A stretch of 64,000 nt of DNA from Rebecca billardiae RCC1528. Taxonomy: Eukaryota > Protista > Haptophyta. Positions 21,901-45,613 of the stretch are shown piece after piece; position 1 is the first letter of the stretch, and every line of letters starts with the position of its first letter. Both the position numbers and the translations under genes were made by a program. The stretch covers positions 1,302,001-1,366,000 of the forward strand of contig OZ251232.1 in assembly GCA_965240325.2 (NCBI GenBank), written 5' to 3'. The notes beneath the pieces were generated by a model. That model ran no database searches, had not been told where the DNA came from, and saw only the letters and a list, made by a program, of their open reading frames with translations.

Positions 21901-24900
21901 TCGCTCGCCGCGAGCGCCGAGCGCCACCTGCCCAGCGCGGCGCGCGCCTCAGCCGACAGCGGCGGCAGTTCCAGCTTGGCGAGCAGATAGTTGGCGGCGT
22001 CGCGCACGCGCGTCACGTGCGCGGCGGGGAGGCCGAAGGAGGCGGGCGGCGGCGGTGGGCGCGACGCGGCGTCGGCGCCGGCCTCTCGCGCCGCCGCGTG
22101 CGCCGCCGCGCTCTCAGCCACCGCCGCCGCCGCCGCCGCCGCCGCGTTGGCGCGCCGCGTCTCGCGGAGGTGCTTCTCGACCGCGCGCATGTCGCGCGCG
22201 GCGCACAGCCACAGCGAGGCGGGCGCGGCGGCGGCGCGGCCGGCGTGCGCGCCGGTGGGCTCGTCGGCGCTCGAGCCCCCGGCGTCGGAGTGCTCGTCCG
22301 AGCACACACTCGACGCCGCGCCCTCCTCCTCTCCGAGCAGCCCGGGCACACCCGCCGTCGGCACGGCACCGCCGCCGCCGCCTCCTCCTCCGCCCACGCC
22401 GTGCGTCGCGCCCGCCGCCTCGGCCGCCGGGATGGCCTCCTCCTTCACCGGCTCGGCGTGCGGCACGTGCGCGAGGGGCAGCGAGGTCTGCAGCAGCACG
22501 AGCTCGGGCCCGGCGCCCGGCGCCTCCGCCGCGCCGCCCTCGCCAAAGCGCAGCCCGAGCCATCGCCAGTCGAGCTCTCGCGCGCCAAGCCGGGCGCCGC
22601 CGGCCGCGTCCGCGCCGCCGTCCGCCATCGCCACGACGGCCGCGCCCGCGCCCGCGTCGGCGCGCGCAAACGCGAAGACGCAGCGCCGGAGCGAGTGCAG
22701 CTCGACCGGGAGGCCGAGCGCCAGCGCCATCGCGCGCAGCCGCGGCACCGCCGCGCGCCAGAACGAACGCACCGCAGTGGGCGGCCCCGCTCCCAGCTTG
22801 AAGTTGAGCACGTCCAGCGCGAGCGAGAGCAGCTCGATCTGCTGGTACCGGCGCACGAGCGCCGCCTCGACGGACGCGAGCATGTCCGTGCGCGCCTCGG
22901 ACGCCAGCGCCCGGTACGCCACGGCGCGTGCGTACGTCAGCAGCATCGCGCGTGACATGCCGAGCTCGGCCGCGCGCGACGCGAGCCGGGCGCGCGCGCG
23001 CTGCCGCAGCATGAGTCCCTCGCTCACAGGCGCGCCCGCCGGCACGCCGCGCCGCCCCGCCGCCGCGCGCGCGGCGGCGGCCGCCTCCGCCAAGCCCACC
23101 GCCCAGCACACGGCGGTGCGGCGCTCCGAAGCGTACACGGAAACCGGCGCGAACGGCGGCGCGCCGGGCTCTGAGATCGCGCCGAACCGCGCGCCACCCG
23201 GCTCTGGCTGGCCGCCGCCGCCGAAGCCGCCGCCGCTCGCGTCCGGCGCGGGGCACACGCAGAAGCCGAGCCACGGAGGCGGCAGCCGTCGTCGCGCGCG
23301 CTCGGCCGCGGCCGCGCCGCCGCCCGCCGTCGGCCGCGCGCGCCCGTCTCCGGGGATCATGCGCACCCACACCGCCTCCAGCGGGAGACGCGTGCCTCTG
23401 CCCGCGGCCGCGCTCGCTGCGTCGTCGCTCACGACGAGGGCGCAGCCGTCGGCGCTCAGCGCGAGCCAGCACCGGCGGAGCGCGGCCGCCGCGGGCTCGG
23501 CCGGCGGCGGCGCGCGCGCTCGCGCCTCCGCGCGCCCGCCGGCGCCGCGCCGCAGCCAGCTCGGCCGCAGGCCGAGAGCGGTGGCGAGGCAGTGCGCGAG
23601 TGCAGGCGGATCGCGCGGCGCCACGGCGCGACGACGCGACGCGCCGGCCGCGCGCGCGTACTGCGGCGGCGGCGGCGCGACCCACAGCGCCGCGCCGCGG
23701 CGGAGCGCGGCCGCGCGCGCGGGCGCGCGCACGGCGTCGCGCGCCGCGCGCAGCTGCAGCCGCAGCGTGCGCTGCGACGCGCGCTCGGAGAGCACCGCGC
23801 GCGCACCGCTCTCCAGTCGCGCCTCAAGGTGGCTCACCTGGCGCTCGAGCGAGGCGGCGCGCGCGCTCGCCGCCGCGGCCTCGGCCGCGCGCGTGCGCGC
23901 CTTGGCGCGCGCGCGCTGCGCGGCCGCCGCGAGGTCGAGCACACCCTGCCGGCGCGCGGCGTACAGGGAGGGCAGCGCGGGCGCGCGGCAGCCGCCGCCG
24001 CCGAGCAGGCCGGCGGCGACGGCGCTGCGCCGACTCGCCGGCGAAACAGCCGAGCCCAGGCCAAACACGCCACCGCCCGCGCCCAGCCCGACGCCCGCGC
24101 CGGAGCCGCGGCGCGGGCTCAGCCGGCTGTCGGCCAGCGCCGACGGCACGAGGGCCCCCGACTCAGCCGCGTGGCGCGCGCGCCGCGCCGTCGCGAGCGC
24201 GGCCGCCTCCGCCCACGCGCCGACCGCGCGGCACAGCGTCGCCACGCGCCTGCGCTCGCGCGAGACGGCGACCGAGCGCTCCGTCGCCGCGCTCGAGTGG
24301 CGCTGCTCGCCGGAGCCGCGCGCCGCGCGCGCCAGTGCGTACAGCTTGGAGCGCTGCGCCAGCAGCGGCGCCACGCGCGCCGCGCGCGCCTCGGCGCGCG
24401 AGAGCGAGATCGACGCGGCGCGCCAGCGCGACAGCAGCGCGCGTTGGCTCGACTCGTGCGCGTGTGCCATCACGCAGCGCACGGCAGCGACCGCCGCGAG
24501 CGCGCGCGCCGACTCGGCCGCGCCGCGCGCGCCCGGAGACGCCCGTGCCGCCGCCGGGCCGAGATACGAGCTCGAGATCGGCGCGAGATTCGTGCTCGAG
24601 ATCGGCGCGAGATACGAGCTCGAGATCGGCGCGAGATTCGTGCTCGCCGAGAGCTGCCGTCGCCAGTCGTCTGTGCGCTGCTGCGCGTCGCCGCGGGCAT
24701 GCGCCTCGTCGGCCGTGCGCAGCGGCACGCCGCCGAGCCCGCCGTCTGCGCCCGGCGCGGCGCCGCCGCCCGCGCCCGCCACCGCGTCCGACAGCAGCGC
24801 CCACGACAGCCCTGTATCCGCGTCGTGATAGTAGATATCACCCTCGCCTACCCACGTGGGTACGGCTACCCACGTGGGTACGGCGCCCGCGCCCGGCGAG

Positions 24901-26108
24901 CGCGGCGCGGAGGCGCGCGCGCCCGGCGCGCCGCCGGGCGAGACGCGCGGCGCGGTGCGGTTCGTCGCCGCGGACGCCACATCGGCCGACTCGGTGCCGG
25001 GCTCCGCGCCGAGCAGCCGCCGGGCGAACGAGAGCGGACCGGCGCGGCGCGGCGCGGACGCGGCGCCGGCCGCGCCGCCTCCGAGCCGCGCGCCGCTGGG
25101 CCCGTCGCGTCGTGCGCCGCCGCCGCCGCTGCCGTGCGCGCGCGCGTCGGCCGACATGCTGCTCCGCGCGGAGCCCAGCGTGGACGGCGACGGCGGCGGC
25201 ACGCGCGGCGTGTGCCCGCCAAAGTCGGGCGTGCTGGCCGAGCGCGCGCGCAGCCCCGCGCCACGCGCCTCCCGGCCAGCCACGTCCTTCGGCGCGCGCG
25301 CGGCCGGCTGCGCGCCGCCCGGCGCGGGCGCGGCGCCGTTGCCGGCGTGCGCCGGCGGCGGCGGCGCGGCGGGCAGCGCGAGCACCTCGAGCGGCTCCGT
25401 GCGCAGGTGCACGCGCTCGAAGATGTTCCGCCCCGGCAGCGCGAGCCGCGCCTGCAGCCTCGGGTGGTGCGCTCGGAGCAGCGCGGGCACCGCGCGAGAA
25501 CCGAACTCGAAGGAGCTGGTGAAGGCCTCCTCGCCCTCGGCGTCGAGCATGCTCAGGTCGCGCGCGAAGATGAGCGCCCCGTCGTCCAGGTAGAGCACGC
25601 GCCAGCCGCGCGGCAGCGCCTCCTCCGCCGCCGCCATCGTGCGTGCGGAGAGCGCGGGCGACGGCGAGGCGCTGGCCATTGCGCTGCCGCGCCCCGACGC
25701 GCCCGGGGTGGCCACGGCGAGGATCGGCGGGCTCGGGGGCGGGAGGCTGGGCGCGCGCATGCCGCCGCCGCCCGTGCCAACCGCGCCGGCGGTCGGCGGC
25801 GTGGGCCGCGAGGACGAGCCCGACGCGGCGCGCGCGGGCGGCGACGAGACAGGCGAGCGCGTGCTGGCCTCCGCGCGGCCGCCGAGCGCTCGGTACGGCG
25901 GCGAGGAGTCGTGGGCGGCGTGCACCGCGCTGCCACCGCTCATGAATGGCTCGTACGGCGCCGTGTCGCCCCACTCGGCGTACGACGACGTGGGCGCGTC
26001 CAACGGCGCGCGCTCGTCGGCGGAATGGTCGACGCCATTCGTCTCAGCCGCCGCCGCCTGCTCGGCCTTCGGCTTCGTCGGGCCGGATGCCATCGCCGAG
26101 AGGACCAT
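18951..26108 (-). CDS. Very large Ala/Pro-rich hypothetical protein with WW-like, coiled-coil, PH-like and C-terminal Tudor/chromo-barrel-like segments
   Basis: Open frame >7 kb (ATG at 26108 or 26093). LPRGWRVLYLDDG and GDIYYHDADTGLSW are WW-like; RRCWLALSADGCALVV...VCWAVGL is PH-like; WRHARVL..FKVSYDGADSDEDEWL is Tudor-knot-like. In-frame introns cannot be excluded. Confidence 0.65.
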   Translation of the reverse strand: MVLSAMASGPTKPKAEQAAAAETNGVDHSADERAPLDAPTSSYAEWGDTAPYEPFMSGGSAVHAAHDSSPPYRALGGRAEASTRSPVSSPPARAASGSSSRPTPPTAGAVGTGGGGMRAPSLPPPSPPILAVATPGASGRGSAMASASPSPALSARTMAAAEEALPRGWRVLYLDDGALIFARDLSMLDAEGEEAFTSSFEFGSRAVPALLRAHHPRLQARLALPGRNIFERVHLRTEPLEVLALPAAPPPPAHAGNGAAPAPGGAQPAARAPKDVAGREARGAGLRARSASTPDFGGHTPRVPPPSPSTLGSARSSMSADARAHGSGGGGARRDGPSGARLGGGAAGAASAPRRAGPLSFARRLLGAEPGTESADVASAATNRTAPRVSPGGAPGARASAPRSPGAGAVPTWVAVPTWVGEGDIYYHDADTGLSWALLSDAVAGAGGGAAPGADGGLGGVPLRTADEAHARGDAQQRTDDWRRQLSASTNLAPISSSYLAPISSTNLAPISSSYLGPAAARASPGARGAAESARALAAVAAVRCVMAHAHESSQRALLSRWRAASISLSRAEARAARVAPLLAQRSKLYALARAARGSGEQRHSSAATERSVAVSRERRRVATLCRAVGAWAEAAALATARRARHAAESGALVPSALADSRLSPRRGSGAGVGLGAGGGVFGLGSAVSPASRRSAVAAGLLGGGGCRAPALPSLYAARRQGVLDLAAAAQRARAKARTRAAEAAAASARAASLERQVSHLEARLESGARAVLSERASQRTLRLQLRAARDAVRAPARAAALRRGAALWVAPPPPQYARAAGASRRRAVAPRDPPALAHCLATALGLRPSWLRRGAGGRAEARARAPPPAEPAAAALRRCWLALSADGCALVVSDDAASAAAGRGTRLPLEAVWVRMIPGDGRARPTAGGGAAAAERARRRLPPPWLGFCVCPAPDASGGGFGGGGQPEPGGARFGAISEPGAPPFAPVSVYASERRTAVCWAVGLAEAAAAARAAAGRRGVPAGAPVSEGLMLRQRARARLASRAAELGMSRAMLLTYARAVAYRALASEARTDMLASVEAALVRRYQQIELLSLALDVLNFKLGAGPPTAVRSFWRAAVPRLRAMALALGLPVELHSLRRCVFAFARADAGAGAAVVAMADGGADAAGGARLGARELDWRWLGLRFGEGGAAEAPGAGPELVLLQTSLPLAHVPHAEPVKEEAIPAAEAAGATHGVGGGGGGGGGAVPTAGVPGLLGEEEGAASSVCSDEHSDAGGSSADEPTGAHAGRAAAAPASLWLCAARDMRAVEKHLRETRRANAAAAAAAAVAESAAAHAAAREAGADAASRPPPPPASFGLPAAHVTRVRDAANYLLAKLELPPLSAEARAALGRWRSALAASDAAPLAHAIDATAELRAAGAAAEADGAAPDGADGGGGGGDGGADDDSWARALAASRSRAAAQSTTGASAGAAAPRRAEAVAFHTVPSSAVLCFAADAGAASKAASWGEGVPRSQQQQQQQQQGGGAALADAWQAGMAGAGVGAAAAPSPPPGGSGAVASVRFTQLRGGVRAAVPHTRAQVALLLHTAQPAAVRTALLPPGACVRVAVRAPGVWLYELRARRGLGAAGTAASADGRSPAAAAAAAARPTAGCYAGCYGVVHVTPSDSPLSQYGRFATDEEEEQAREHGGGARGADGAEPAAQPHAPPAPEPAPARLALPCSAAALHAAAQALRLKLAGMRPLGDDTHMSKLRRAEEEMAAAESRSLAQRRTVSALASSGGGAGAAERARAAAHAAADADGAADDAASLHRFAHPPSSQVAVFRLGAGGGGGVGTPTGGAAGAAEGARHADATAGPGSAQPPARPRPAVGTHGAAPPSLLWAKSGGDEDEEEEEEAGGGGGGALGRRGARHRGSGARASAGGPPDSSGVDPFGAYAEGLFPTAFPPAQPPRSGGRPGARSAGRPAPPARSSSRGRISLASLEPLPELPTAPPQQQPTAARSEPEIAPEIAPEIAREIAREIAPEVVPEIAPPPTPHDAAVPLASANAEQLTPPTPPQPTPPTPAPQQPQPAPQQPAWPHAAARAGPPPREPSPPPRPAAPVGEPAAARAPPRTAAPPEAAAAAAAGGAGVRAVVWSQLAPGARVLVCRADDEAARAEDADAWRHARVLSRRAAARAGAPPEFKVSYDGADSDEDEWLSAAEDGARVRPFVEREARSGEQPPSSTAHCQPRSARQPPPRAPADGGGGGGMPRADDADARSAEARADAPPPPTVPDPPAGGAAPPAARPPRMRTAHSSPTLSVSDPPPGPDDALERPSAARGAAATADPARWIEMERLRLKQQKDALAERRAQRRRRSESGGGSSPSGGSASGASPVAGGSPRWPVD
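20017..20103. repeat. 12-nt coding minisatellite (EIAP/EIAR)
   Basis: About 7 units of GCGCAATCTCG(G/C). Confidence 0.85.
24560..24647. repeat. 24-nt coding minisatellite (ISSSYLAP/ISSTNLAP)
   Basis: About 3.5 units containing CTCGAGATCGGCGCGAGAT. Confidence 0.85.
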
Positions 26109-26322
26109 GGGGCGTCGAGGCCCGCAGCAGCTGCCCCTGCCGCGCGGCGGCGCGACCGGCGGCTGGGCAGCGCACGCGCGGCGCCGTGCTCGCGGCGGCG
26201 CGAAAAGAGCTGCTTGCTGATGCTTGGTCCTCGGACCGCCCGATCGAGAGCTCCACTCAGTGACCACGGTGCCTCGCCGTCCCCGCTGATCGGCGGAGGG
26301 GACTCTCACGCCCATCCCCGCG

Positions 26323-27042
26323 ATGGCGGCCGGCGCGCCGAACGCGGGCGCCGGCGAGGCGGAGGAGGCGGGCGGCGGCGGGAGGCAATGCCGCATCTGC
26401 TGCGACGACACGGACGGCGACGGCGACGAGCGCCTCTTCCGCCCGTGCCTCTGCCGCGGCTCCCTCGCCCTCGTCCACGTCGGCTGCCTGGACACGTGGC
26501 GGAAGACATCGGCCAACCCAAACTCCCGCTGGCGGTGCGACGTGTGTCGGCACGAGTACAGCTTCCGCGCGGCGTTCGGCGCGGACCGGCTGCTCCTCTC
26601 GCGCGTGCTCAGCTCGCCCTGCTTCAGCGAGCTCGCCAGCCTCGCCATCCTCGGCTGCGCCGTCTTTCTCTCCGGGTTCTGCGCCAAGGCCTTCCTCTAC
26701 CCGGACTGGCACGGGGTCTTTGTGGTGGACTGGGCGCACTGGGTGCTCGGCGCGTCGGTCACGGGCCTCGGCTCGGTGCTCGGCTGGCTCGTCGCGACGA
26801 TCGGCCCGTACCACGGCCTGCAGGTCGCCGGGCAGCAGGCGCCGTGGAACTACGTGCCGCGCGGCGCGCGCGGCAACCACAACACTGACGGCCTCTTCAC
26901 CGTCGTGGCGGCCATCGTTGTGGTGGTCGGCCTCGGCATGGCGCTCGTGTGGATACACCGCGTGGTCAAGGCGCAGACCAGGCGCGCGCTTCACCACGGG
27001 GCGCAGGTCGTGCTCGACGTCGCGCACAAGAAGCAGCAGTGA
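26323..27042 (+). CDS. Membrane-associated RING-CH (MARCH-type) E3 ubiquitin ligase
   Basis: CRICC...PCLCRGSLALVHVGCLDTW...CDVC (RINGv) followed by several transmembrane helices. Confidence 0.9.
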   Translation: MAAGAPNAGAGEAEEAGGGGRQCRICCDDTDGDGDERLFRPCLCRGSLALVHVGCLDTWRKTSANPNSRWRCDVCRHEYSFRAAFGADRLLLSRVLSSPCFSELASLAILGCAVFLSGFCAKAFLYPDWHGVFVVDWAHWVLGASVTGLGSVLGWLVATIGPYHGLQVAGQQAPWNYVPRGARGNHNTDGLFTVVAAIVVVVGLGMALVWIHRVVKAQTRRALHHGAQVVLDVAHKKQQ

Positions 27043-29546: not shown

Positions 29547-31639
29547 CTAGGCGGCAGGTGCGGGCTGCGCATCGCCCTTCTGGGGCTGCGCGTTTGCCCT
29601 GCTCAGCCCGATCGCGGCGAGCAGGGCGCAGCCTGACGGGCGCGCGGCGCGCGGGCGAGGCGTCGCGGCGTCAGGGCGCGGGTGGCGGGCGCGGCTGGCC
29701 GCAGGCGACGCGCGCCGCGCGCGCGGCGTCGGCGCGCGCGCACTAAGGGCGGCGGTCGAGCAGCGCAGCGCGCCAACGGTGCCCAGTTTGCCGATCGAGA
29801 GGAAGACCACGACGACGATCAGGTTGAGCGGGATCCCGAACAGGTTCATGATGGCGCCCCGGTGCTCGTCCGGCAGCACCTTGGAGCGCAGCGTGCCGAT
29901 GCACGGGAAGTACACGCCCACGCACGCCTCGAAGGCGAAGAGGGCGAGCGTGAGCGCGCCGAGCGCGGAGCGCGAGGCGGCGACGGTGGCCGTCGCCATC
30001 GCGCCCACGCCGAGGGCGAGCATGGACACAGTCACGCTCTCCGTGCGCCTCCCCGCCTTCGCCGCGAGCGCGAACGCCGACGAGCCGAGCATGCAGCACG
30101 CCATGAAGCACGAGAAGATGGCGCCGAACGGGACGGCCGCGCCGCTCGCCGCGTCGCCGAGCGCGCCGATCGCCGCGCGGAAGGCCGGCGGCCAGACGAG
30201 CACGAAGGTGTACCTGCGCCGCGCACGAGCGCGCGCGCCGACGGGTGCGCACGGCGCGAGGGACGCGCGGCGCACGGCTCAGCTCGGCGTGCTGCCTCGG
30301 CGCGCGCGCGCGAGCGCGCGCACGCCTCGCCGGCGTGCCGCCCCTTGGCAGGGCGCGCCGCCCCTTGGCAGGGCGCGCCGCCCCTTGGCAGGGCGCGCGT
30401 TGGCAGGGCGCCCCTTGGCAGGGCGCGCGTTGGCAGGGCGCCCCTTGGCAGGGCGCGCGTTGGCAGGGCGCGTGTGTTGGCAGGGCGCGTTGTGCGCGCG
30501 CACATGGCGCCCTCAAAGAAGGCCTGGATGCCGCCGACGAGCATGACGCGCTTGTCCGAGAGCATCGCCTGCCACGCGCTGCCCACGCGGCGCACCAGCG
30601 CGTTCGAGCCCTCCCCGCCCGCCTCCCCCTTCGCACCCTCCCCGCTCCCGCCGCCACCGCTCCCGCCGCCGCCGCCAAAGTTCTCCTTCCAGGTGGTGGC
30701 GACCAGCGTGGCGCCGAGCAGCAGGAAGCCGATGGAGAGGAGGAACGGGGCGACGGGGCCGCCGTACGAGGCGACCCCGCCCGCGAGCTGCCCCGCGAGC
30801 ATCGCCACCACCGAGTCGCCCAGGTACGCCAGCCCGAACGTCTGCGAGAGCAGGCTGCCGCCCATCCCGCCCTTGGAGTGCTCGCCGATCAGCCACGCCT
30901 CGGGCGCGGAGAAGAGGAGCGAGGTGCCGACGCCGCCGCAGAAGCGGCCGGCGTAGAGGAGCGGGAGGGAGGCCGCGCTCGTGCTCAGCGCGCCGAGCGA
31001 GTACGCCGCGGCGAACGCGAGCGAGGCGCGCTTCCGCCCGAGCAGGTCCACCATGCTGCCAACAAACGGACCAATCAGCATGGTGGAGCCAAACCCGGCG
31101 AGGAAGAGGCGCGCGACGCCGTCGGCGGAGACGGGGATGCCGCCGATCAGCTTCGAGGCGTACACGTCGTAGAAGTACGGCCCCTGCAGCCAGTCCGCCA
31201 TCTTGTACAGCCAGAACACCGCGAGGAAGCGGTTGCGCAGCGAGCGCTCGGGGGCCGTGAGCGCGGCCGCCTCGCCGCCGCTCTGCTGCCTGCTGCGCAC
31301 GACGACCTGGAGCGCGAGGCAGGCGAGCGCGAGCACCCAGAAGACGGAGTTGTACAGCGTGCCCACCGACAGCGCGCCCGAGCGCAGGCTGCTCACCACG
31401 CCCTGCCCGCCGCGCAGCTGCAGCATCATGTGCGGACCGGACGACGGGCACGCGGGCGAGCGCGTGTGCGCGCCGCGCGGCAGGGCGGAGGAGCCGAGCT
31501 GGAGCGATGCGCGTGCCGAGGGCGTGCGGCCGAGGCGGACTGGCGAGGCGAACGCGCCGGCCGCGCCGATCTGCGACGCCACCGCGGCGCAAAGCAGCAC
31601 GGCCGCGCGGCAGGTGGTGAGGGCGCGCATGCCGGCCAT
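29547..31639 (-). CDS. MFS molybdate-anion transporter family (MFSD5/MOT2-like) with N-terminal presequence
   Basis: ADWLQGPYFYDVY, TSLLFSAPEAW, FFEGAM|YTFVLVW, RGAIMNLFGIPLN; introns 30503-30214 and 29743-29633. Confidence 0.9.
30341..30490. repeat. Intronic minisatellite
   Basis: Nine copies of TTGGCAGGGCG at 15-20 nt spacing. Confidence 0.9.
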
Positions 31640-33846: not shown

Positions 33847-34946
33847 CGATTGGCGGACACTACGCCCGGCACACGCGCAGCCTCACCGTGCCCACTCGGG
33901 CCGTTGCTGCGGCCTAAGCTCATTCCGGATCGCCCCTAGCTAGGCCGCCAGGCCCTGTGAGGCCGCGGTGCTCACTACCGCGGTGCTCGGCTGAGTGCTG
34001 TGCCGTAGCAGTACTAGGCCTAGCGTAAAGACAGTTTAGTAAAGTAAAGTTCCGCAAAAGTTGCGTCTCGGCGAGCTTTCGCCAGCGCCAGCCTCACAGT
34101 GACAGTCACTGCCGGGCGGCGCCACGTATACAATTATTACAGTAGACGCCTTTAGTGTCACGATGACGAACGTATGACTGCGCTGATGTCATTGGCACTG
34201 GCAGTTCGGTTTATCAGTTCCCGGAACCGATGGCCCTGACCGGCGCCCGCGCGGTGCAGGGCGGAGTGCGCAGCGTGCAGCCCGCACCGCGAGGGCCTCA
34301 CTACGCGTAGGGGTCAAACGGATCATCTTCATTCGTCGTTTGCTGATCCGAGCACCGCGCACTCGACTGGCAGTGTCACAGGCAGCACCGACCGCGCCAA
34401 AGCCACGCAACGGTTGCCCGTACCGCCGCGTCCGCTTCTGTCCGCCACAAGCGCTTGTGCTGTGCCTTGAACCAGTGCGCATTCGGCTAGCATAGATGAA
34501 GCTCCCTCTTCATAGATCCCGCGTCTGGCCCTTGCAGATGAAGCGTGAGCCGCAAGCGAACGCACTGAAGTCACGCAAACACCATTTGGGCGGATTGGGC
34601 GCTGAACGGAGGCCACTGACTGAGTGACGGAGGCGAGCCATGCGCGTCAGCCGAGGGGCCATTAGGTGCTACCAGGCCTGCCCGCCACACGCACCGTCGC
34701 AAAGCCTCCGCCTTCGCCAGCGCGGACCAGAGGCGAGGCCGCACGCCACTTCAGCCACTTTGCGGGCGTCGTGCGGGCGGTGCTGGCCAACTTGAGGTTG
34801 AGGCTTGCTTGGCCAGGTTTATAAACTGTAGATAGCTGATGAAACAAACAGCAAAGCAGGTCTGATACGACGAAACTGCTCAGTTCCAGGAATCTCGATG
34901 GCTGAACAAGTCCAATTCTGACCGGTTCGTCAATCCGTCAATACTT

Positions 34947-35674
34947 TCCCCCCCCCAAGAAGGGCTCAGCCCTCGATTTGCGCGCGGGACGCGCGCCGTC
35001 GAAGTCGCGCTTTCGCCGCTTCTGAAAAGCGCCGTGGTACCTTTCCGCGCGCTGCGCGCCAGTGGGCGCACAGTGGCGGCCGCGCGCCGCCGCGCGGGCC
35101 GCAGCCTCGCGGCCACTGGCGCCACCGCGAGGCCGCGCGCTCGGGCGGCGCGGGCTGCCAGCCGCGCGTAGGAGCCCGCCGCGCGCGCTCGGCCCGGCTC
35201 GCGGCCTGCTCGCCGCCCGTGCGCTCGGCACGCGGCCGGCGCGACCCGGGCGGCGCGGCGCGCGAGGTTCGCGCGCCCGCTCGGCGGGCGCGTGAGCGAG
35301 TCGAGCGCGTTCGGTCGGCCGCGCCTGGGCGAGCGTGTCCGCCACAGGCTGTAGCGAGCCGGGCTCCCTCGCCTCGACGCCCGAGGCGGTGCGCCGCGCG
35401 CGTTCTGTGCCGGTCTGCGGCGGCGCAGCGGCTGCGCTCGCGCACGGACGGCCGCTGGGCTTGGATGGGCGCTCTCGAGCGCGTTTGGCGGCGGATCCCG
35501 CGCGGAGGGCTGGGGCAGGCACGGCAGTCCGCTCTGTCCGCGCCAAGCCCGCCTCGTGACGGAGGCCTTGCCCATCGACCGCTCGCGCGCCTCGCCGCCG
35601 GCGCTCGACCGGAGTCGGGCGTGGGCCGCACGCGCCGCGCGCGCCGCGCGCCCGCCCGGTCGGCCCACGAAGGC
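34947..35674 (-). repeat. Left arm of long inverted repeat
   Basis: Reverse complement of 37793-38521. Confidence 0.95.
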
Positions 35675-36900: not shown

Positions 36901-37792
36901 GCTCTTTCGCACTGCGACGTCCGCGTGTGACACGGGGCACAGCCTCTACCGCCTGACCACCAGCATTTCGCCCCACTTAAGTGCACTCTGGATGGCACGG
37001 CTACACGAGCAGTCACCAATGATGCCTCTGTCTGACAGACGGTCACACAGGCTGGCTAGCGCCCTCAGCGCGCCTCTGCAGCGGCAGCAGATGGCGGGGT
37101 GCTTGCGCTTGGCGATTGAGGCAAGGTTGGCCGGCGCGCACGGTCGGTGGCCCACCGCGATCTCGCCCTCGGGAGGCAGCGCCTGATGGGCCGAGCGAAC
37201 TTGCGAGCACACTATGGGCCACGCGAGTGCCTCTGCTCGGCCAGCGGCTGCTGTCCTGCGGTGCCGAGCCCGAGATGATGTCGGCCAGCATGGTGGGCTG
37301 CCTCGGACCTGCCTCGGGCACACCGTGATGGCGCATGTTCGCTCGGTGATGTGCCTAGCCGCACCGGAGCGGGCACGGCATCGGTGATGGCGGCTCTGAC
37401 CTGTCAGCCAGAGAGTCTCAGCTGGCGTGTGCACCACGGGCTCGGCCGTCGTTGTTGTCAGGTACTCGGGTCGCCGCCTCAAGTTGTTAGACTCACCCGA
37501 CCTTCCGCCTAGACGTGTTGGACGCAGCCACGTGCTATCTACTGGCGCACACCTGGATGTGTGTGGCACAGCCTCTCGCGCGCCCAGCGATTAAATCAGG
37601 CACGGGGCGAGCTGCGTGCAGCCCACGGGCTAAGCTCCGCTCACGATTGCAACACTTCTGACCTGTGTCCACGGCGTGCACAGCGACACACGCGCGCATG
37701 CTGGAGCGAGGCGCGCCAAAGGCGACGTCCAGGAAGGCGTGCGACCAGCCAGCGCACGCGGGAGCCAGGCAATGTGAAGAGCACATCGCATC

Positions 37793-38521
37793 GCCTTCAT
37801 GGGCCGACCGGGCGGGCGCGCGGCGCGCGCGGCGCGTGCGGCCCACGCCCGACTCCGGTCGAGCGCCGGCGGCGAGGCGCGCGAGCGGTCGATGGGCAAG
37901 GCCTCCGTCACGAGGCGGGCCGGGCGCGGACAGAGCGGACTGCCGTGCCTGCCCCAGCCCTCCGCGCGGGATCCGCCGCCAAACGCGCTCGAGAGCGCCC
38001 ATCCAAGCCCAGCGGCCGTCCGTGCGCGAGCGCAGCCGCTGCGCCGCCGCAGACCGGCACAGAACGCGCGCGGCGCACCGCCTCGGGCGTCGAGGCGAGG
38101 GAGCCCGGCTCGCTACAGCCTGTGGCGGACACGCTCGCCCAGGCGCGGCCGACCGAACGCGCTCGACTCGCTCACGCGCCCGCCGAGCGGGCGCGCGAAC
38201 CTCGCGCGCCGCGCCGCCCGGGTCGCGCCGGCCGCGTGCCGAGCGCACGGGCGGCGAGCAGGCCGCGAGCCGGGCCGAGCGCGCGCGGCGGGCTCCTACG
38301 CGCGGCTGGCAGCCCGCGCCGCCCGAGCGCGCGGCCTCGCGGTGGCGCCAGTGGCCGCGAGGCTGCGGCCCGCGCGGCGGCGCGCGGCCGCCACTGTGCG
38401 CCCACTGGCGCGGCAGCGCGCGGAAAGGTACCACGGCGCTTTTCAGAAGCGGCGAAAGCGCGACTTCGACGGCGCGCGTCCCGCGCGCAAATCGAGGGCT
38501 GAGCCCTTCTTGGGGGGGGGA
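37793..38521 (+). repeat. Right arm of long inverted repeat
   Basis: Reverse complement of 34947-35674; ends about 106 nt before the SAM-LRR ATG. Confidence 0.95.
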
Positions 38522-38627
38522 GATTAGGTTCATCAACCAAATCGCGCGTGACGCATTCCCACTTCGAGGTGCCGGCGAGGACGCGCACCATCTGCTCGAG
38601 CTGGGAGCGCGGAAGGTGGGCGCGAGC

Positions 38628-41600
38628 ATGCAACACGCCGCGTCACCTTCGTCACCCGCCGACGCCTCATCGTCAGAGCCGCCTGCAGCCAACGTGAGCC
38701 TGGACGCAGTGGACAACGAGGGCGTGTGTGCCCTGATCGCCTCGCTCCATTTCGACGAGCTTGTGCGGATTGCGCGGCGCAAGAATTTCCGCGGCAAGGA
38801 TCTGCGCGAACTCGAGGTGAACGATCTGAAGCAGTTCGAGCTCAGCTCGGGCGTGCGTGGCCACCGCTTCTTGGAGGAGGTGAAGGAGCTGAGCCTCTCG
38901 GGCGTGCCGCCATGGCGGCTCAAAGCCAAGCAGGCGTCGCCGCAGCAGCAGCCATCCAAGAGCGGCGACACTCGCGAGGGGCCTGGGCCGGAACCGGCGA
39001 CAGGGCAGGCCCCGGCGCCATCGTCGAAACAGGTCGAATCCGAGGTCCCGCCACAGACCAGCGAAGCCACCGGCGCCGCCGAGCTGCAAACGGCGCCGCC
39101 GCCGATCCACGCCTCTGCAGAGCAGCTCGAGGCGCTCGCGAGCGCTGTGGGCGTGGACTCAGCAGATGCGCTGATGGGGCTGAAGCAGGCGATGTGGAGG
39201 AAGAGGATGGCGGTGGCGGCGCACGCGCAGGCGATCGCGCACCTCGCCGCGCACTCTGCCAAGCTAACGAAGCTCGATCTCGACCTGACGGGCGTGGGCG
39301 ACGAGTGCGTGCGGCTGCTGTCGCAGGCGCTGCGGGCGGGCAGCTGCCGCCTGAAAAGGCTCTACCTGCGGTGCGCGCACGCACTGCGCGGTGAGGGGGC
39401 CAGCTGGCGGCGCGTGCGGTGGAGGGGAGGGGGGGGGGGGGGGGGCAGCGCGTGCCTCCACGCGCCGCGCCGCAGCAGCACCGTTGCGCGAGGCTGCGTC
39501 CGCGCCCGGCGCGCACAACGTGCCGTGCGCGCCGCCCGGCGCGCGCGGCCGGTGCGGCAGCGCGTGCGCAGCGTTGCGGTGCGCTGCAGTGGGCGGCGCG
39601 TGGTGCGCAGCGGCGTGGGCTGACACTGTCCATCCCACCCCGCGCGACCACCGCGCTCGCCTCTCCGCGCTTCCCCTCCCCTGTGCGTGCCTCCGCTGTG
39701 CACACAGCTCCAACGACCTGACGGACGTCTCCGGCACAGCGCTGGCGGAGGCGCTCCTCACCAACACCTCGCTGCATACGCTCGACCTGGAGTACGCGCA
39801 CGCACGGCGCCGCGAGGCGCGTGGCGGGCGGCGCAGGCGGCGGAGAGTAAGGGGGAGAGGACGGTTCGCGCGCCGTGTGCAACGCGTGCACCCGCGCGTG
39901 CACCCGCGCACGGTGCCACAGTAGCACCGTTGCGCGAGGCTGCGGCCGCGCCCAGCGCGCGCCCCACATCGCGCGTCACCCCAGGGCGGGCGGCGCGCGC
40001 GTCCGGTGCGGTGGCGCGTGCGCAGCGTGGCGGTGCGGTGCGGTGGGCGGTGCGGTGCACAGCGGTGTGGGCTGACACTGCCCACCTCACCCCGCGCGAC
40101 CACCGCGCTCGCCTCTCCGCGCTTCCCCTCCCCTGCGCGTGCCCCCGCTGTGCACACAGCTACAACGACCTGACGGACGTCTCCGGCACAGCGCTGGCGG
40201 AGGCGCTCCGCACCAACACCTCGCTGCATACGCTCGACCTGGAGTACGCGCACGCACGGCGCCGCGAGGCGCGTGGCGGGCGGCGCAGGCGGCGGAGAGG
40301 AAGGGGGAGAGGACGGGTCGCGCGCCGTGTGCAACGCGTGCACCCGCGCGTGCACCCGCGCACTGTGCCACAGTAGCACCGTTGCGCGAGGCTGCGGCCG
40401 CGCCCAGTGCGCGCCCCACATCGCGCGTCACCCCAGGGCGGGCGGCGCGCGCGTCCGGTGCGGTGGCGCGTGCGCAGCGTGGCGGTGCGGTGCGGTGGGC
40501 GGTGCGGTGCACAGCGGTGTGGGCTGACACTGCCCACCTCACCCCGCGCGACCACCGCGCTCACCTCTCCGCGCGCGCCCTTCCCTCGGCGTGCCCCCGC
40601 TGTGCACACAGCCGCAACCAGCTGACGGACGTCTCCGGCACAGCGCTGATGGAGGCGCTCCGCACCAACATCTCGCTGCAGCAGCTCCACCTGGAGTACG
40701 CGCACGCGCGGCGCGGCGATGGGGGGGGCGCGCGGTGCGTGCATTGAAGTGGTGGGAGGATGGTTCGCGCACCGTTTGCAGCGCGTGCACCCGCGCGCCG
40801 CGCCGCAGCAGCGCCGTCGCGCGAGGCTGCGGCAGCACCCGGCGCTAGCGCTGCGCCACGCGCGCCGCCCCACTGCGGGCGGCGGGCGCGGCAGTTTTGG
40901 CGGCGAGCGTGCAGCGTGGCGGTGCGGTGCGTTGGGCGGCGCGTGGTGCCCAGCGGCGTTGGCTGACACTGCCCACCCCACCCACGCACCCGCCGCGCTC
41001 GCCTCTTCGCACGCGCCTTTACCTCGGCGTGCCTCCGCTCGGCACACAGGGGCAACCAGCTGAGCTTTAGTGTCCGCGCCGGAGCGGAGAAGCTCAAGGC
41101 GCTCGCGCGCGCTGTCGGCGTGGGCTCTGCACAGGCGTTGATGGGGCTGGAGGAGGCGGAGTGGAGCGAGAAGACGGCGGTGGCGGCGTACACGCAGGCG
41201 ATCGCGCACCTCGCCGCGCACAGTGCCAAGCTAATGGAGCTCGATCTCGACATGACGGGCGTGGGCGACAAGTGCGCGCGGCTGCTGTCGCAGGCGCTGC
41301 GGGCGGACAGCTGCCGCCTGAAAAGGCTCTACCTGCGGTGCGCGCACGCACTGCGCGGTGAGGGGGCCAGCTGGCGGCGCGTGCGGTGGAGGGGAAGAGG
41401 GGTGGGGGGGGGGGGGGGGGGCTCCACGCGCCGCGCCGCAGCAGCGCCGTTTCACGAGGCTGCGTCGGCGCCCGGCGCGCACAACGTGCCGTGCGCGCCG
41501 CCCGGCGCGCGCGCCCGGTGCGGCGGCGAGTGCGGTGCGGTGGGCGGTGCGTGGTGCGCGGCGGCGTTGGCTGACAGCACCCCTCCCACCCGCGCACCCG

Positions 41601-44600
41601 CCGCGCGTGCCTCTGCGCTCCCCCTTCCCTCGGCGTGCCTCCGCTGTGCACACAGCTGGAACCAGCTGACGGACGTCTCCGGCACAGCGCTGGCGGAGGC
41701 GCTCCGCACCAACACCAAGCTGCAGCACCTCTGGCTGAGGTACGCGCATGCACGGGGCGGCGAGGGGGGCGGTGCGCGGCGCGGGCGGCGGAGGGGGGGG
41801 AGGGGGCTCGCGCGCCGTGCGCATCGCGCGCACGTGCGAGCACCCGCGCACGGCGCCGCAGCAGCGCCGTCGCGCGAGGCTGCGGCCGCGCCCGACGCAC
41901 TCGCCGCGGGGCGCGCGCGCCGCCCCTCGGCGTGCGGTGGCGCGTGGGCAGCGGTGCGGTGCGGTGCGGTGCGCGGCGCGTGGTGCGGTGCGGCGTGGGC
42001 TGACACTGCCCCTCCCACCCCGCGCGACCGCGGCGCTCGCCTCTCCGCGCTTCCCCTCCCCTCGGCGTGCCTCCGCTGTGCACACAGCAACAACCAGCTG
42101 ACGGACGTCTCCGGCACAGCGCTGGCGGAGGCGCTCCGCACCAACACCAAGCTGCAGGAGCTCTACGTGAGGTACGCGCACGCACGGCGCGGCGAGGGGG
42201 TCGGCGCGCGGCGCGGGCGGCGGAGAGGGGGAGGGGGTCGCGCGCCGTGTGTATCGCGCGCACGTGCGAGCACCCGCGCACGGCGCCGCAGCAGCGCCGT
42301 CGCGCGAGGCTGCGGCCGCGGCCGGCGCCCTTGCCGCGCGGCGCGCGCGCCGCCCCTCGGCGTGTGGCGGCGCGTGCGGTGCGGTGCGGTGCCGTGCGGT
42401 GCGCGGCGCGTGGTGCGCAGCGGCGTGGGCTGACACTGCCTATCCCACCCCGCGCGACCACCGCGCTCGCCTCTCCGCGCTTCCCCTCCCCTCGGCGTGC
42501 CTCCGCTGTGCACACAGCCGCAACCAGCTGACGGACGTCTCCGGCACAGCGCTGGCGGAGGCGCTCCGCACCAACACCAAGCTGCAGGGGCTCTTCCTGG
42601 AGTACGCGCACGCACGGCGCCGCGACGGGGGCGGTGCGCGGCGCGGGCGGTGGAGGGGGGGGGCGGGGGTCGTGCGCCGTGCGCATCGTGCGCACATGCG
42701 AGCACCCGCGCACGGCGCCGCAGCAGCGCCGTCGCGCGAGGCTGCGGCAGCGCCCAGCGCACTCGCCGCGCGGCGCGCGCGCCGCCCCTCGGCGTGTGGC
42801 GGCGCGTGCGGTGCGGTGCGGTGCCGTGCGGTGCGCGGCGCGTGGTGCGCAGCGGCGTGGGCTGACACTGCCTATCCCACCCCGCGTGACCGCCGCGCTC
42901 GCCCCTTCGCGCTTCCCCTCCCCTCGGCGTGCCTCCGCTGTGCACACAGCGGCAACCAGCTGACGGACGTCTCCGGCACAGCGCTGGCGGAGGCGCTCCG
43001 CACCAACACCGAGCTGGAGTACCTCAGCCTGGAGTACGCGCACGCACGGCGCCGCGACGGGGGCGGTGCGCGGCGCGGGCGGTGGAGGGGGGGGGCGGGG
43101 GTCGTGCGCCGTGCGCATCGTGCGCACATGCGAGCACCCGCGCACGGCGCCGCAGCAGCGCCGTCGCGCGAGGCTGCGGCAGCGCCCAGCGCACTCGCCG
43201 CGCGGCGCGCGCGCCGCCCCTCGGCGTGTGGCGGCGCGTGCGGTGCGGTGCGGTGCCGTGCGGTGCGCGGCGCGTGGTGCGCAGCGGCGTGGGCTGACAC
43301 TGCCCATCCCACCCCACGTGACCGCCGCGCTCGCCCCTTCGCGCTTCCCCTCCCCTCGGCGTGCCTCCACTGTGCACACAGCGGCAACCAGCTGACGGAC
43401 GTCTCCGGCACAGCGCTGGCGGAGGCGCTCCGCACCAACACCAAGCTGTGGTTGCTCGACCTGGGGTACGCGCACGCACGGCGCGGCGAGGGGGTCGGCG
43501 CGCGGCGCGGGCGGAAAGGGAAGGGGGAGGGCGCGCATCGCGTGCATCGCGCGCACGTGCGAGCACACGCGCACGGCGCCGCAGAAGCGCCGTCGCGCGA
43601 GGCTGCGGCCGCGGCCGGCACACTCGCCGCGCGGCGCGCGCGCCGCCCCTCGGCGTGCGGCGGCGCGTGCGCAGCGTAGCTGTGCAGTGCGGTGCGCAGC
43701 GCGCGGTGCGCAGCGGCATGGGCTAACACCACCGCTCCCACCCCGCGCGACCACCGCGCTCGCCTCTCCGCGCTTCCCCTCCCCTCGGCGTGCCTCCGCT
43801 GTGCACACAGCTTCAACAAGCTGACGGACGTCTCCGGCACAGCGCTGGCGGAGGCGCTCCGCACCAACACCTCGCTGCAGGATCTCAACCTGGAGTATGC
43901 GCACGCACGGTGGGGCGAGGGGGGCGGCGCGCGGCGCGTGCGGTGGAGGGGGAGGGAGGGAGGTTCGTGTGCCGTGTGCAGCGTGGGCAGCCGCGCGCCG
44001 CGCCGCAGCAGCGCCGTTGCGCGAGGCTGCGGCCGCGCCCGGCGCGCGCCCCACATCGCGCGTCACCCCACGGCGGGCAGCGCGCGCGGCCGGCGCGGCG
44101 GCGCGTGTGCAGCGGTGCGGTGCGGTGCGGTGGGCGGAGCGATGCGCAGCGGTGTGGGCTGACACTGCCCACTCCACCCCGCGCGTCCGCGGCGCTCGTA
44201 TCTTCGCGCTTCCCCTCCCCTCGGCGTGCCTTCGCTGTGCACACAGGGACAACAAGCTGACGGACGTCTCCGGCACAGCGCTGGCGGAGGCGCTCCGCAC
44301 CAACACCAAGCTGCAGGAGCTCAGCCTGGGGTACGCGCACGCACGGTGGGGCGAGGGGGGCGGCGCGCGGCGCGTGCGGTGGAGTGGTGAAAGGGTGATT
44401 CGCGCGCCGTGTGCAGCGTGGGCACCCGCGCGCCGCGCCGCAGCAGCGCCGTCCCGCGAGGCTGCGGCCGTGCCCGGCGCACGCCCCACATCGCGCGTCA
44501 CCCCACGGCGGGCAGCGCGCGCGGCCGGCGCGGCGGCGCGTGTGCAGCGGTGCGGTGCGGTGCGGTGGGCGGAGCGATGCGCAGCGGTGTGGGCTGACAC

Positions 44601-44769
44601 TGCCCACTCCACCCCGCGCGTCCGCGGCGCTCGTATCTTCGCGCTTCCCCTCCCCTTGGCGTGCCTTCGCTGTGCACACAGGGACAACAAGCTGAGCGAT
44701 GCTCAGATAGCCGCCGTCGAACAGGCCTGGGAAGGCAGTGGCCGCAGCGGCGGGAACCTCTACATCTAG
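38628..44769 (+). CDS. SAM-domain + ribonuclease-inhibitor-type LRR protein, 13 exons, ~652 aa
   Basis: Exons 38628-39370, 39708-39791, 40160-40243, 40612-40695, 41050-41337, 41656-41739, 42088-42171, 42518-42601, 42950-43033, 43382-43465, 43811-43894, 44247-44330, 44682-44769. All introns are GT-AG, phase 2; the spliced frame is open to TAG. SAM-like VCALIASLHFDELVRIARRKNFRGKDLRELEVNDLKQFELSSGVRGHRFLEEVKEL; 28-aa repeats xNxLTDVSGTALAEALRTNTxLxxLxL. Confidence 0.9.
39371..44681 (+). repeat. Tandem exon+intron array (period ~430-452 nt)
   Basis: Twelve related 318-368 nt introns sharing a GT(A/G)(C/T)GCGCA donor, a GGCT(G/A)ACA branch-point-like motif and a GCACACAG acceptor, alternating with LRR exons. 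Confidence 0.95.
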
Positions 44770-45613
44770 AGAGGCCTGGAGGATGGCGCGCGTGTGGGCA
44801 GTGTGGGCGCGTGAAGCCCCGGCCTGCATGCCCGCTCCCGGCGCCGACTGCGCCGCCAGCCGCCGCTTCGGCATCCGCAGGCAGTCCGGCCCCAGCCTGT
44901 GCCTGCACGCGGCGCCGTCAGCTGATGCCGCGGTCGGGCGGCAGATGACAGCAGTCAGCAGTCGTGCCGACGTGCGCACAGCGCAGCCGTGCCTCGATGA
45001 TGAACCAGCAGTGCCGGCGCACGGGGCTAGCATATTATACATATAACGACGTGGCATGCAACGGGCAAGCGTCAGGCTCAGAGTGCAGCAGATTACTGGT
45101 ACATGAGCGCCATTCGATCTTATTCGTCATCAAAGCCGCCTCCGTCTAGCGACCCGTTGCATCACCCCCGGGGCCATCCGCCAAGTGAATGTGAGGCGGC
45201 GCCGGTCCTTGTGCCGGCCGTGCGCCGTGCCACGGCCGGCGGCTGCCACGCCAGCCACGCGCCCCGCCGTTGGCGCCGCCAACCGTCCGCATCGTCCGCC
45301 GAGCAAGCGACGCGGGGGGGGCGGCATGAGTGACAGACGAAGGGGCCATGCATGCGCATTGGGTGCTATACCGCCAGACCTGCGCGCCCGCCTCGCGCAC
45401 CGTCGCCCAGCCATCGCCTTCGCCAGCGCGCAACCGGCGACCGCCGCCCACCCGGGCCGGCGGCCGCGCCGGCATGCCGGACGGCGCATCCCCGGCCTGC
45501 CCGGTGCGGCCAGTACGTCCGGGAGACTGCGCTGTCTCAAGACACCCGGTCGTCGGGCGTCACTGGATGCGTCCGCTGCCGCCGCTTCCCGCGTCGCCCG
45601 CGCACACGACACG

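What the first reader, a model, noticed from the sequence alone, without database searches (positions are those of the whole stretch)
38628..44769. SAM-LRR gene built from interchangeable one-repeat-per-exon cassettes: candidate algal diversifying immune-receptor system
Seen: ten exons of exactly 84 nt (28 codons), each one RI-type LRR. All are flanked by phase-2 introns from one repeat family, between an N-terminal SAM-like domain and a capping exon. Any cassette can be skipped, duplicated or swapped without a frameshift. The intron splits the concave strand (LxxLxLx|xN), so a new exon neighbour creates a new binding surface. Established: SAM domains oligomerise; vertebrate NLR LRR exons and brown-algal ROCO LRR genes use repeat-per-exon designs, the latter with exon shuffling. 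Inference: a cytosolic receptor (no signal peptide or TM seen) diversified by recombination and/or alternative splicing. I do not know of a described SAM+LRR cassette gene lacking a NACHT/ROC domain in such an alga.
Basis: partly seen in the sequence, partly recalled or inferred. Interest (0 to 1): 0.92.

Follow-up and report, generated by a model that had tools for sequence, protein, structure and literature searches.

The report
Algal SAM-like LRR gene, one repeat per exon
An intact gene of a very GC-rich, probably haptophyte, alga encodes a soluble leucine-rich-repeat protein whose ten repeats each sit on their own 84-base exon and differ almost only at the predicted ligand-facing residues; the design is already known from brown algae and vertebrate NLR genes, and no available data could test whether the exons are shuffled or alternatively spliced.

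Summary
The gene (38628-44769, + strand) has 13 exons and encodes 652 aa. Ten 84-nt exons each encode one RI-type LRR. All 12 introns are phase 2, GT..AG, and belong to one family (76-99% identical). The N-terminal SAM call is probable but below Pfam's threshold. No signal peptide or membrane segment was found.

Cassettes differ almost only at the x positions of LxxLxLxxNxL: pN 0.53 there, against 0.155 in introns and zero synonymous change in the framework. So selection keeps the predicted ligand face diverse.

Alternative splicing, exon shuffling between strains and an immune role remain untested: no RNA run was listed, and both metagenome scans were empty.

The design is published for brown-algal ROCO genes (72-nt phase-2 LRR exons) and for NLRP3. 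This scan's own notes list at least 14 one-LRR-per-exon genes elsewhere in the same genome, so the scan has found this kind before on other DNA. Verdict: a real gene and a new variant of a known kind, of moderate interest.

The parts
38628..39370 (+). Exon 1 (743 nt, residues 1-247): SAM-like domain, P/Q/S/A-rich linker, helical N-cap and first LRR
   Evidence: ATG and donor GTGCGC at 39371. The in-frame upstream stretch lacks a coding GC signature.
38709..38891 (+). SAM-like domain (residues 28-88)
   Evidence: Pfam SAM_2 E 0.003, 18.1 bits (cut-off 20.5), profile positions 4-65 of 66. DGK-delta SAM 3bq7 E 0.37. 57 of 100 ESM-Atlas feature hits are SAM clusters, score 0.87. Helices 30-40, 42-51, 64-74 and 78-89 in a low-confidence model.
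39106..39370 (+). N-cap plus first LRR module, copy 1 (AEQLEALASAVGV...ALMGL...AIAHLAAHSAKLTKLDLD...LKRLYL)
   Evidence: 36-47% identical to the same module in P0021 and P0023. The relative's model shows it as helices plus degenerate LRR turns at the start of the horseshoe.
39708..39791 (+). LRR cassette exon 2 (84 nt)
40160..40243 (+). LRR cassette exon 3 (84 nt); differs from exon 2 at 2 nt
40612..40695 (+). LRR cassette exon 4 (84 nt)
41050..41337 (+). Exon 5 (288 nt): starts like the last exon (GNQLS), then a second copy of the N-cap plus first LRR.
   Evidence: Local alignment 39106-39707 against 41073-41655: exon part 88% identical, intron part 91%. Phase-2 introns on both sides.
41656..41739 (+). 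LRR cassette exon 6 (84 nt)
42088..42171 (+). LRR cassette exon 7 (84 nt)
42518..42601 (+). LRR cassette exon 8 (84 nt)
42950..43033 (+). LRR cassette exon 9 (84 nt). Its flanking introns 8 and 9 differ at 3 of 348 nt, yet it differs from exons 8 and 10 at 8 nt each, all in hypervariable codons.
43382..43465 (+). LRR cassette exon 10 (84 nt)
43811..43894 (+). LRR cassette exon 11 (84 nt)
44247..44330 (+). LRR cassette exon 12 (84 nt)
44682..44769 (+). Exon 13 (88 nt including the stop): C-terminal cap DNKLSDAQIAAVEQAWEGSGRSGGNLYI
   Evidence: Same C-cap motif (N.LS[DE].....[AV]..AWG) in P0021 and P0023.
39371..44681 (+). Span holding the twelve homologous phase-2 introns: 39371-39707, 39792-40159, 40244-40611, 40696-41049, 41338-41655, 41740-42087, 42172-42517, 42602-42949, 43034-43381, 43466-43810, 43895-44246, 44331-44681
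   Evidence: MAFFT identity matrix 0.76-0.99. 41% of ungapped columns vary. TRF periods 452 and 432.

Best explanation
This is an intact, germline-encoded gene for a soluble protein with three parts: a probable SAM-fold domain at the N-terminus, a disordered linker, and two RI-type LRR blocks. Each block opens with a lineage-specific helical N-cap, and the protein ends in a conserved C-cap.

The LRR region grew by tandem duplication of a ~432-bp unit of one 84-nt exon plus one ~350-nt intron. A larger internal duplication also copied the N-cap/first-LRR segment into what is now exon 5. The exon cores are identical and the introns homologous, so unequal crossing-over and gene conversion keep framework and introns similar. 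Selection keeps, or drives, differences at the six to seven solvent-exposed x positions of LxxLxLxxNxL that line the concave face.

The protein most likely binds a protein ligand on that face and signals or assembles through the N-terminal domain.

Shown: gene structure, repeat family, RI-type fold, and the site-specific excess of replacement change. Inferred: the recombination mechanism, ligand binding, SAM-mediated assembly, and any role in defence.
For: - Gene model with a full open frame, canonical splice sites and coding-type GC3.
- Intron family and nested identity groups: I2~I3 97%, I8~I9 99%, I11~I12 96%, I1~I5 89%.
- Site classes among the ten cassettes: pN 0.527 and pS 0.108 at six hypervariable codons. 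The 21 framework codons give pN 0.023 and pS 0/877.5. Introns give p 0.155.
- 0 of 17 framework fourfold sites vary, against 41% of intron columns; P about 1e-4.
- Introns 8 and 9 differ at 3 of 348 nt, while exon 9 differs from each neighbour at 8 nt, all in hypervariable codons.
- RI-type LRR: local phmmer of the spliced protein against LRR_6 proteins gives E down to 1e-66. The AF2 model of the relative's cap-LRR module (pLDDT 86) matches ribonuclease inhibitor, NOD2 and NLRP3.
- The same cap-LRR-cap module follows other N-terminal domains in transcript-derived relatives, with cassettes contiguous, i.e. spliced.
- No TM or signal peptide.
Against: - There are no expression data for this gene. 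No RNA run was listed, and the listed runs carried only one 151-nt piece plus poly-G noise.
- Hypervariable-patch distance does not track flanking-intron distance (rho 0.07-0.21, Mantel p 0.10-0.32). Steady point-substitution selection therefore cannot be told apart from old differences preserved amid homogenisation, or from short patches imported from paralogues elsewhere in the genome.
- The SAM call is below Pfam's threshold, and the single-sequence model of exon 1 is poor (pLDDT 43).
- The full spliced protein was neither folded nor scanned as one chain, because it has no reference.
Confidence: 0.7

Rival explanations
1. Combinatorial isoform repertoire: the symmetric cassettes are skipped or chosen in different combinations during splicing. 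One gene would then yield many LRR surfaces, as reported for Ectocarpus ROCO genes and for NLRP3.
For: All cassettes are 84 nt with phase-2 introns on both sides, and exon 5 is 288 nt, so any skip keeps the frame. Splice sites and the 3' ends of the introns are near-identical, so the sites are equivalent. There is a published precedent (PMC11378527; PMC11352923).
Against: No transcript data could be obtained. No docking/selector-type complementarity was seen among the introns, only GC-palindromic low-complexity matches. Frame symmetry follows automatically from tandem duplication of an exon-intron unit, so it is not evidence of use.
Confidence: 0.15
2. Ordinary fixed-ligand scaffold: an old LRR array that binds one conserved partner. 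RI-type LRRs also occur in axonemal and cytoplasmic-lattice proteins. Concerted evolution erases neutral differences while purifying selection merely preserves each repeat's specific contact residues. There would be no arms race and no immune role.
For: Structural neighbours include axonemal doublet-microtubule LRR proteins and oocyte-lattice NLRPs as well as immune NLRs. Hypervariable distance is decoupled from intron distance. Zero synonymous change in the framework points to homogenisation or nucleotide-level constraint rather than a simple young array. The youngest pair, exons 2 and 3, shows almost no hypervariable change: 1 of 21 nt against 3% in the intron.
Against: No detectable orthologue of the N-terminal half exists among 1.84 billion cluster representatives, so the gene is not a conserved housekeeping protein. 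By this scan's unchecked notes the genome holds many cassette-LRR genes with different partner domains, a pattern typical of expanding receptor families.
Confidence: 0.25
3. Somatic, VLR-like assembly: the hypervariable patches are copied in from donor cassettes by gene conversion within a cell lineage.
For: Identical ~50-nt exon cores flanked by short patches with ~38% divergence inside units that are otherwise 99% identical are the kind of substrate copy-choice would use.
Against: The gene is complete and in frame in the germline. No orphan or reverse-oriented cassettes, and no extra intron copies, occur anywhere else in the 64-kb window. No read data were available to show mosaicism.
Confidence: 0.02
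4. Assembly artefact: the cassette number or order is wrong because a ~432-bp tandem repeat was collapsed or expanded.
For: Units 2/3 and introns 8/9 are 97-99% identical. No independent reads spanning the array could be laid.
Against: Nine of the ten cassettes carry unique hypervariable patches, and most introns differ by 8-24%, which anchors the order. The reading frame and every splice site are intact across 6.1 kb.
Confidence: 0.05

Closest known systems
Brown-algal ROCO (LRR-ROC-COR) genes with one LRR per exon (Zambounis et al. 2012, PMC3341825; Teng et al. 2024, PMC11378527)
   Same: One repeat per exon, all introns phase 2, tandem exon duplication and shuffling, and positive selection at concave-face residues in a photosynthetic protist. 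They are proposed as candidate immune receptors.
   Different: Those exons are 72 nt (24-residue LRRs) and are joined to a ROC-COR GTPase. Orphan and antisense LRR exons lie in their introns, and alternative splicing is documented. Here the exons are 84 nt (RI-type, 28 residues), there is no GTPase, the N-terminus is SAM-like, no orphan cassettes were found, and splicing is untested. The host is probably a haptophyte rather than a stramenopile.
Vertebrate NLR and ribonuclease-inhibitor LRR exons (NLRP3: 171-bp exons of two RI-type repeats with frame-preserving borders and alternative splicing; PMC11352923)
   Same: RI-type 28/29-residue repeats. They are the best sequence hits and structural hits. 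Exon borders fall at the same place in every repeat, so exons can be dropped in frame.
   Different: No NACHT/NB-ARC domain here. There is one repeat per exon rather than two. The N-cap and C-cap are lineage-specific.
LRSAM1 (animal LRR + SAM + RING E3 ligase that recognises intracellular bacteria; PMC11863841, PMC8567218)
   Same: It combines an LRR recognition domain with a SAM domain in a cytosolic protein.
   Different: The domain order is reversed, LRSAM1 carries a RING and coiled coils, and no RING was found here. No sequence relationship was detected.
Cap-LRR-cap relatives P0021 (U-box/RING-kinase-LRR; JGI sample 3300016802) and P0023 (MMETSP transcript)
   Same: They share the helical N-cap, the first LRR, 28-residue cassettes and the C-cap (36-47% identity). 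GC content and GC3 are similar.
   Different: Their N-terminal domains differ: a kinase with U-box/RING, and a hydrophobic N-terminus. P0021's cassettes are identical to each other, even at the variable positions.

Membership tests
RI-type (ribonuclease-inhibitor-like, Pfam LRR_6) leucine-rich repeats | 28-29-residue repeat with LxxLxLxxN/CxL followed by an alpha-helix | tested here: met
   The ten cassettes plus the exon 1 and exon 5 repeats fit the motif. Local phmmer of the spliced protein against LRR_6-rich proteins gives E 1e-66 to 1e-36.
RI-type (ribonuclease-inhibitor-like, Pfam LRR_6) leucine-rich repeats | Horseshoe fold like ribonuclease inhibitor | tested here: met
   Tested on the relative's module aligned with the window's two cap copies: pLDDT 86. 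Foldseek top hits are RI 4peq/2bex (TM 0.68-0.72), NOD2 and NLRP3. The window's full spliced protein was not folded.
SAM domain (Pfam SAM_2/SAM_1) | Score at or above Pfam's gathering threshold | tested here: not met
   18.1 bits against 20.5, E 0.003, but end to end over profile positions 4-65 of 66.
SAM domain (Pfam SAM_2/SAM_1) | Five-helix bundle of about 65 residues | tested here: inconclusive
   Four helices of at least 4 residues, plus a short turn at 59-61, are predicted in residues 30-89, but model pLDDT is 43. A weak DGK-delta SAM match and SAM-dominated Atlas feature hits at 0.87 are leads only.
NLR / STAND receptors | Central NACHT or NB-ARC NTPase domain | tested here: not met
   No such Pfam hit in exon 1 or exon 5. 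The remaining exons are LRR cassettes and the cap.
Brown-algal ROCO cassette-LRR genes | ROC-COR GTPase tandem | tested here: not met
   No ROC/COR hit.
Brown-algal ROCO cassette-LRR genes | One LRR per phase-2 exon of constant length, with positive selection on the concave face | tested here: met
   84-nt (not 72-nt) exons, all phase 2. pN 0.53 at x positions against 0.155 in introns.
Brown-algal ROCO cassette-LRR genes | Alternative splicing of LRR exons; orphan or antisense LRR exons in introns | tested here: inconclusive
   Orphan or antisense cassettes are absent from the window. Splicing could not be tested: no RNA run was listed.
LRSAM1-type E3 ligases | C-terminal RING finger with LRR-coiled coil-SAM order | tested here: not met
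   No RING hit, and the SAM-like domain is N-terminal.
VLR-like somatically assembled LRR receptors | Incomplete germline gene flanked by donor LRR cassettes | tested here: not met
   The germline gene is complete. No donor cassettes lie within 38 kb upstream or 19 kb downstream.
Dscam-like mutually exclusive exon arrays | Docking and selector RNA pairing between introns | tested here: inconclusive
   Only 70-85% GC-palindromic matches typical of this composition were found. There are no transcript data.

The most novel reading that the evidence does not exclude
This gene is one member of a haptophyte-wide repertoire of cassette-LRR receptors. In it, the same cap-LRR-cap recognition module is joined to different signalling heads: SAM-like here, and U-box-kinase, EDR1-type kinase and XK-like membrane domains elsewhere in the genome by the scan's unchecked notes. 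Recombination between identical exon cores, and perhaps exon skipping, would generate new binding surfaces against viruses or bacteria. That would be an innate immune system that arose independently of NLRs and of brown-algal ROCOs.
Probability: 0.15. Interest if true: 0.75.

Novelty: new variant of a known kind. Interest (0 to 1): 0.4.

Why it matters
Haptophytes are major ocean primary producers that suffer heavy viral mortality, yet I know of no described pathogen-receptor family in them, and my paper searches returned none. A cassette-built, fast-diversifying RI-type LRR gene with a probable oligomerisation domain is a reasonable candidate for such a receptor. It also shows that the one-repeat-per-exon, same-phase design recurs in a third distant lineage. 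The locus gives a clean natural experiment: identical exon cores, 15%-diverged introns and saturated binding-face codons. That makes it useful for separating gene conversion from positive selection in repeat proteins. As a single gene with no expression or population data, its immediate weight is moderate.

Tried and rejected
1. RNA evidence. The look-up of sequencing runs (rna) listed nothing. With kind 'any', three coded runs of one sample came back. Laid on 38800-44790, they gave one 151-nt contig at 39000-39150 and poly-G artefacts at 39424-39452 and 41399-41426. The 'joints' there are poly-G cross-matches, not splicing.

2. Public relatives. A 26-nt cassette-core pattern had 0 exact matches in metagenome contigs. 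A profile scan with the cap-LRR alignment confirmed no relative. phmmer of exon 1 against 1.84 billion representatives found only LRR-level hits, plus two proteins that share the cap module. Nothing matched the N-terminal 100 residues.

3. Single-sequence AF2 of exon 1 was too poor to use (pLDDT 43), so no fold search was run on it.

4. The 1198-codon ORF on the minus strand across the array (41094-44690) was rejected as coding. Its GC is flat at 0.79/0.78/0.76 and its product is Ala/Arg/Pro-rich.

5. An upstream extension of the reading frame (37665-38627) was rejected for the same reason.

6. ORFs inside and on the arms of the upstream inverted repeat have no Pfam hit.

It was analysed only inside scripts.

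8. The scan's findings index, queried by sequence, returned nothing.
Full report
**Observation**

The region is a tandem array. TRF reports periods of 452 bp (39448-41010) and 432 bp (41433-44695). Searching for the recurring acceptor ...CACACAG| and donor |GT(A/G)(C/T)GCGCA motifs, then joining the pieces, gives one uninterrupted CDS:

- 1959 nt, 652 aa, ATG at 38628, stop ending at 44769, 13 exons.
- Ten exons of exactly 84 nt.
- Exon 1 of 743 nt, exon 5 of 288 nt, and a last exon of 88 nt.
- Every one of the 12 introns splits a codon after its second base. Exons 2-12 are all multiples of three, so each could be removed or repeated in frame.

GC at codon positions 1/2/3 is 0.68/0.46/0.89, the signature of real coding sequence in this 72%-GC genome. 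A 1198-codon ORF on the opposite strand is flat (0.79/0.78/0.76) and is a by-product of composition. The in-frame stretch upstream of the ATG is equally flat.

A 39-nt cassette core occurs ten times within 3 mismatches (eight copies exact), against zero in shuffles, and nowhere else in the window.

Exon 5 splits the cassettes into blocks of three and seven.

**Protein**

Each cassette encodes xN(Q/K/D)LTDVSGTALAEALRTNTxLxxLxL.

Several results confirm the RI-type LRR assignment:

- phmmer of exon 1 against 1.84 billion cluster representatives found only LRR-level matches. These are mostly vertebrate NLRP/NLRC and ribonuclease-inhibitor-like proteins rich in Pfam LRR_6.
- The spliced protein, compared locally with those hits, scores E 1e-66 to 1e-36.

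Two hits extend further: P0021 and P0023.

- P0021 has a U-box/RING, a kinase and an LRR region. It comes from an intron-less, transcript-like 2.8-kb JGI contig.
- P0023 is an MMETSP transcript.
- Both share a helical module just before the first LRR (..QLEALA..VGV....ALM.L..A.W.....A.AIAHL.AHS..L..LDLD) and the C-terminal cap (N.LS......AW.) at 36-47% identity.

An AlphaFold model of that module from P0021, aligned with the window's two copies, is confident (pLDDT 86, pTM 0.81). It matches ribonuclease inhibitor, axonemal LRR proteins, NOD2 and NLRP3. In the model the 'cap' is a helix followed by degenerate LRR turns.

The evidence for the N-terminal SAM-like domain is suggestive but sub-threshold:

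- Residues 28-88 match Pfam SAM_2 end to end, but below threshold: E 0.003, 18.1 bits against 20.5.
- They weakly match the DGK-delta SAM structure (E 0.37).
- SAM clusters dominate the ESM-Atlas feature hits at score 0.87, which is a lead only.
- The single-sequence model is poor (pLDDT 43) but helical in the right places.

I rate a SAM fold at about 75%.

There is no hydrophobic segment: the maximum Kyte-Doolittle 19-residue mean is 1.14, and the N-terminus is polar. No NACHT, ROC, RING or kinase domain was found.

**History of the locus**

All 12 introns are homologous at 76-99% identity. Some pairs are young: I2/I3 97%, I8/I9 99%, I11/I12 96%.

Exon 5 begins like the terminal exon (GNQLS against DNKLS). 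It then continues as a copy of 39106-39370 at 88% identity, followed by an intron 91% identical to intron 1. This fits an internal tandem duplication whose breakpoints lay in exon 1, just upstream of the cap, and just inside the terminal exon. That reading is an inference.

**Site-specific divergence among the ten cassettes**

| Site class | Measure |
|---|---|
| Six hypervariable codons (x8, x10, x28, x2, x3, x5 of the repeat) | pN 0.527, pS 0.108 |
| 21 framework codons | pN 0.023, pS 0 of 877.5 pairwise synonymous sites |
| Introns | p 0.155 |
| 17 framework fourfold sites | none vary |
| Ungapped intron columns | 41% vary |

The probability that all 17 fourfold sites stay invariant, given the intron rate, is about 1e-4.

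The sharpest case is exon 9. Introns 8 and 9 differ at 3 of 348 nt, and the first 60 nt of exons 9 and 10 are identical. Yet exon 9 differs from exons 8 and 10 at 8 nt each, all in hypervariable codons.

In contrast, the young pair of exons 2 and 3 differs at one hypervariable and one framework nucleotide. Across all pairs, hypervariable-patch distance does not follow flanking-intron distance (rho 0.07-0.21; Mantel p 0.10 and 0.32).

Relaxed constraint cannot explain replacement change three to five times the neutral level, so selection for different residues on the predicted binding face is required. The data cannot separate three routes:

- repeated adaptive substitution;
- old differences shielded from an ongoing homogenisation that also freezes the exon cores;
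- short patches imported from paralogous cassettes elsewhere in the genome.

**What could not be shown**

- No RNA run was listed.
- The three runs of one sample that were listed hold one 151-nt piece and poly-G noise.
- The cassette core and the cap profile found nothing in metagenome contigs.
- The window holds no orphan, antisense or paralogous cassettes.
- The introns show no docking/selector-type complementarity beyond GC palindromes.

Alternative splicing, strain-to-strain shuffling, somatic change and an immune role all stay open.

**Context**

- A neighbouring single-exon molybdate-transporter-like ORF is 61% identical to its Diacronema lutheri homologue, the best named hit.
- That genome is 73.25% GC (PMC8379373). 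The window probably comes from a Pavlovales-like haptophyte, though this rests on one gene.
- Other neighbours are ordinary: FYVE, lipin LNS2, PAP-fibrillin and RCC1.
- The scan's own unchecked notes list at least 14 one-LRR-per-exon genes elsewhere in this genome. Several have 84-nt phase-2 exons and other partner domains: U-box-kinase, EDR1-type kinase and an XK-like membrane protein.
- P0021 shows that the U-box-kinase version exists as a transcript in a related GC-rich organism.

**Comparison with the literature**

- Brown-algal ROCO genes carry one 72-nt LRR per phase-2 exon. Exon shuffling, positive selection on the concave face and alternative splicing are all documented for them (PMC3341825, PMC11378527).
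- NLRP3 has frame-preserving 171-bp exons of RI-type repeats that are alternatively spliced (PMC11352923).
- LRSAM1 joins LRR and SAM in animals.
- My searches found no description of a SAM-like/RI-LRR cassette gene in a haptophyte or other microalga. The absence from an open-access library is weak evidence.

**Verdict**

The diversifying-selection signature is strong. The 'diversifying immune-receptor system' reading is permitted but unsupported by any functional or transcript evidence. The design principle is already known, and it recurs in this genome.

Noticed in passing
window 34942-35674 and 37793-38526: A ~733-nt inverted repeat: 620 nt at 100% plus 114 nt at 98% complementarity. Its right arm ends about 100 nt upstream of the gene's ATG. 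The 2.1-kb spacer (67% GC) and the arm ORFs have no Pfam hit. Beyond the left arm lies AT-richer sequence with no similar gene.
   Followed up: partly
window 41094-44690, minus strand: A 1198-codon open frame runs antisense through the whole second cassette block. It has flat codon-position GC and an Ala/Arg/Pro-rich product, so it is a by-product of 77% GC and tandem repetition, not a gene.
   Followed up: yes
window, nt 28-32 of every cassette (e.g. 42545-42549): Each 84-nt exon contains ...TCTCCGGCACAG|CG, which resembles the introns' own acceptor ...GTGCACACAG|. It includes an ACA Thr codon that is conserved in all ten copies even though GC3 is 0.89. Use as a cryptic acceptor would shift the frame. 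Its meaning is unknown.
   Followed up: no
window 39424-39446 and 41399-41426: Poly-G tracts at the same place in introns 1 and 5 attract unrelated contigs from sequencing runs. They produce false 'joints' that skip about 1.95 kb.
   Followed up: yes
window 30032-31639, minus strand: A single-exon MFS_5 (molybdate-transporter-like) ORF. Its best named relative is Diacronema lutheri at 61% identity. Together with 72% GC, this suggests a Pavlovales-like haptophyte.
   Followed up: partly
L001 18-2117 (protein P0021): A transcript-like JGI contig encodes U-box/RING, a kinase and the same cap-LRR-cap module. Its three to four cassettes are identical in protein, and the two copies checked are also identical in nucleotides. 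This reflects either very recent duplication or an assembly collapse.
   Followed up: partly
window 18951-26687, minus strand: A 2578-codon open frame lies in an 80%-GC stretch. I did not examine whether it is a real giant low-complexity gene or a compositional artefact.
   Followed up: no
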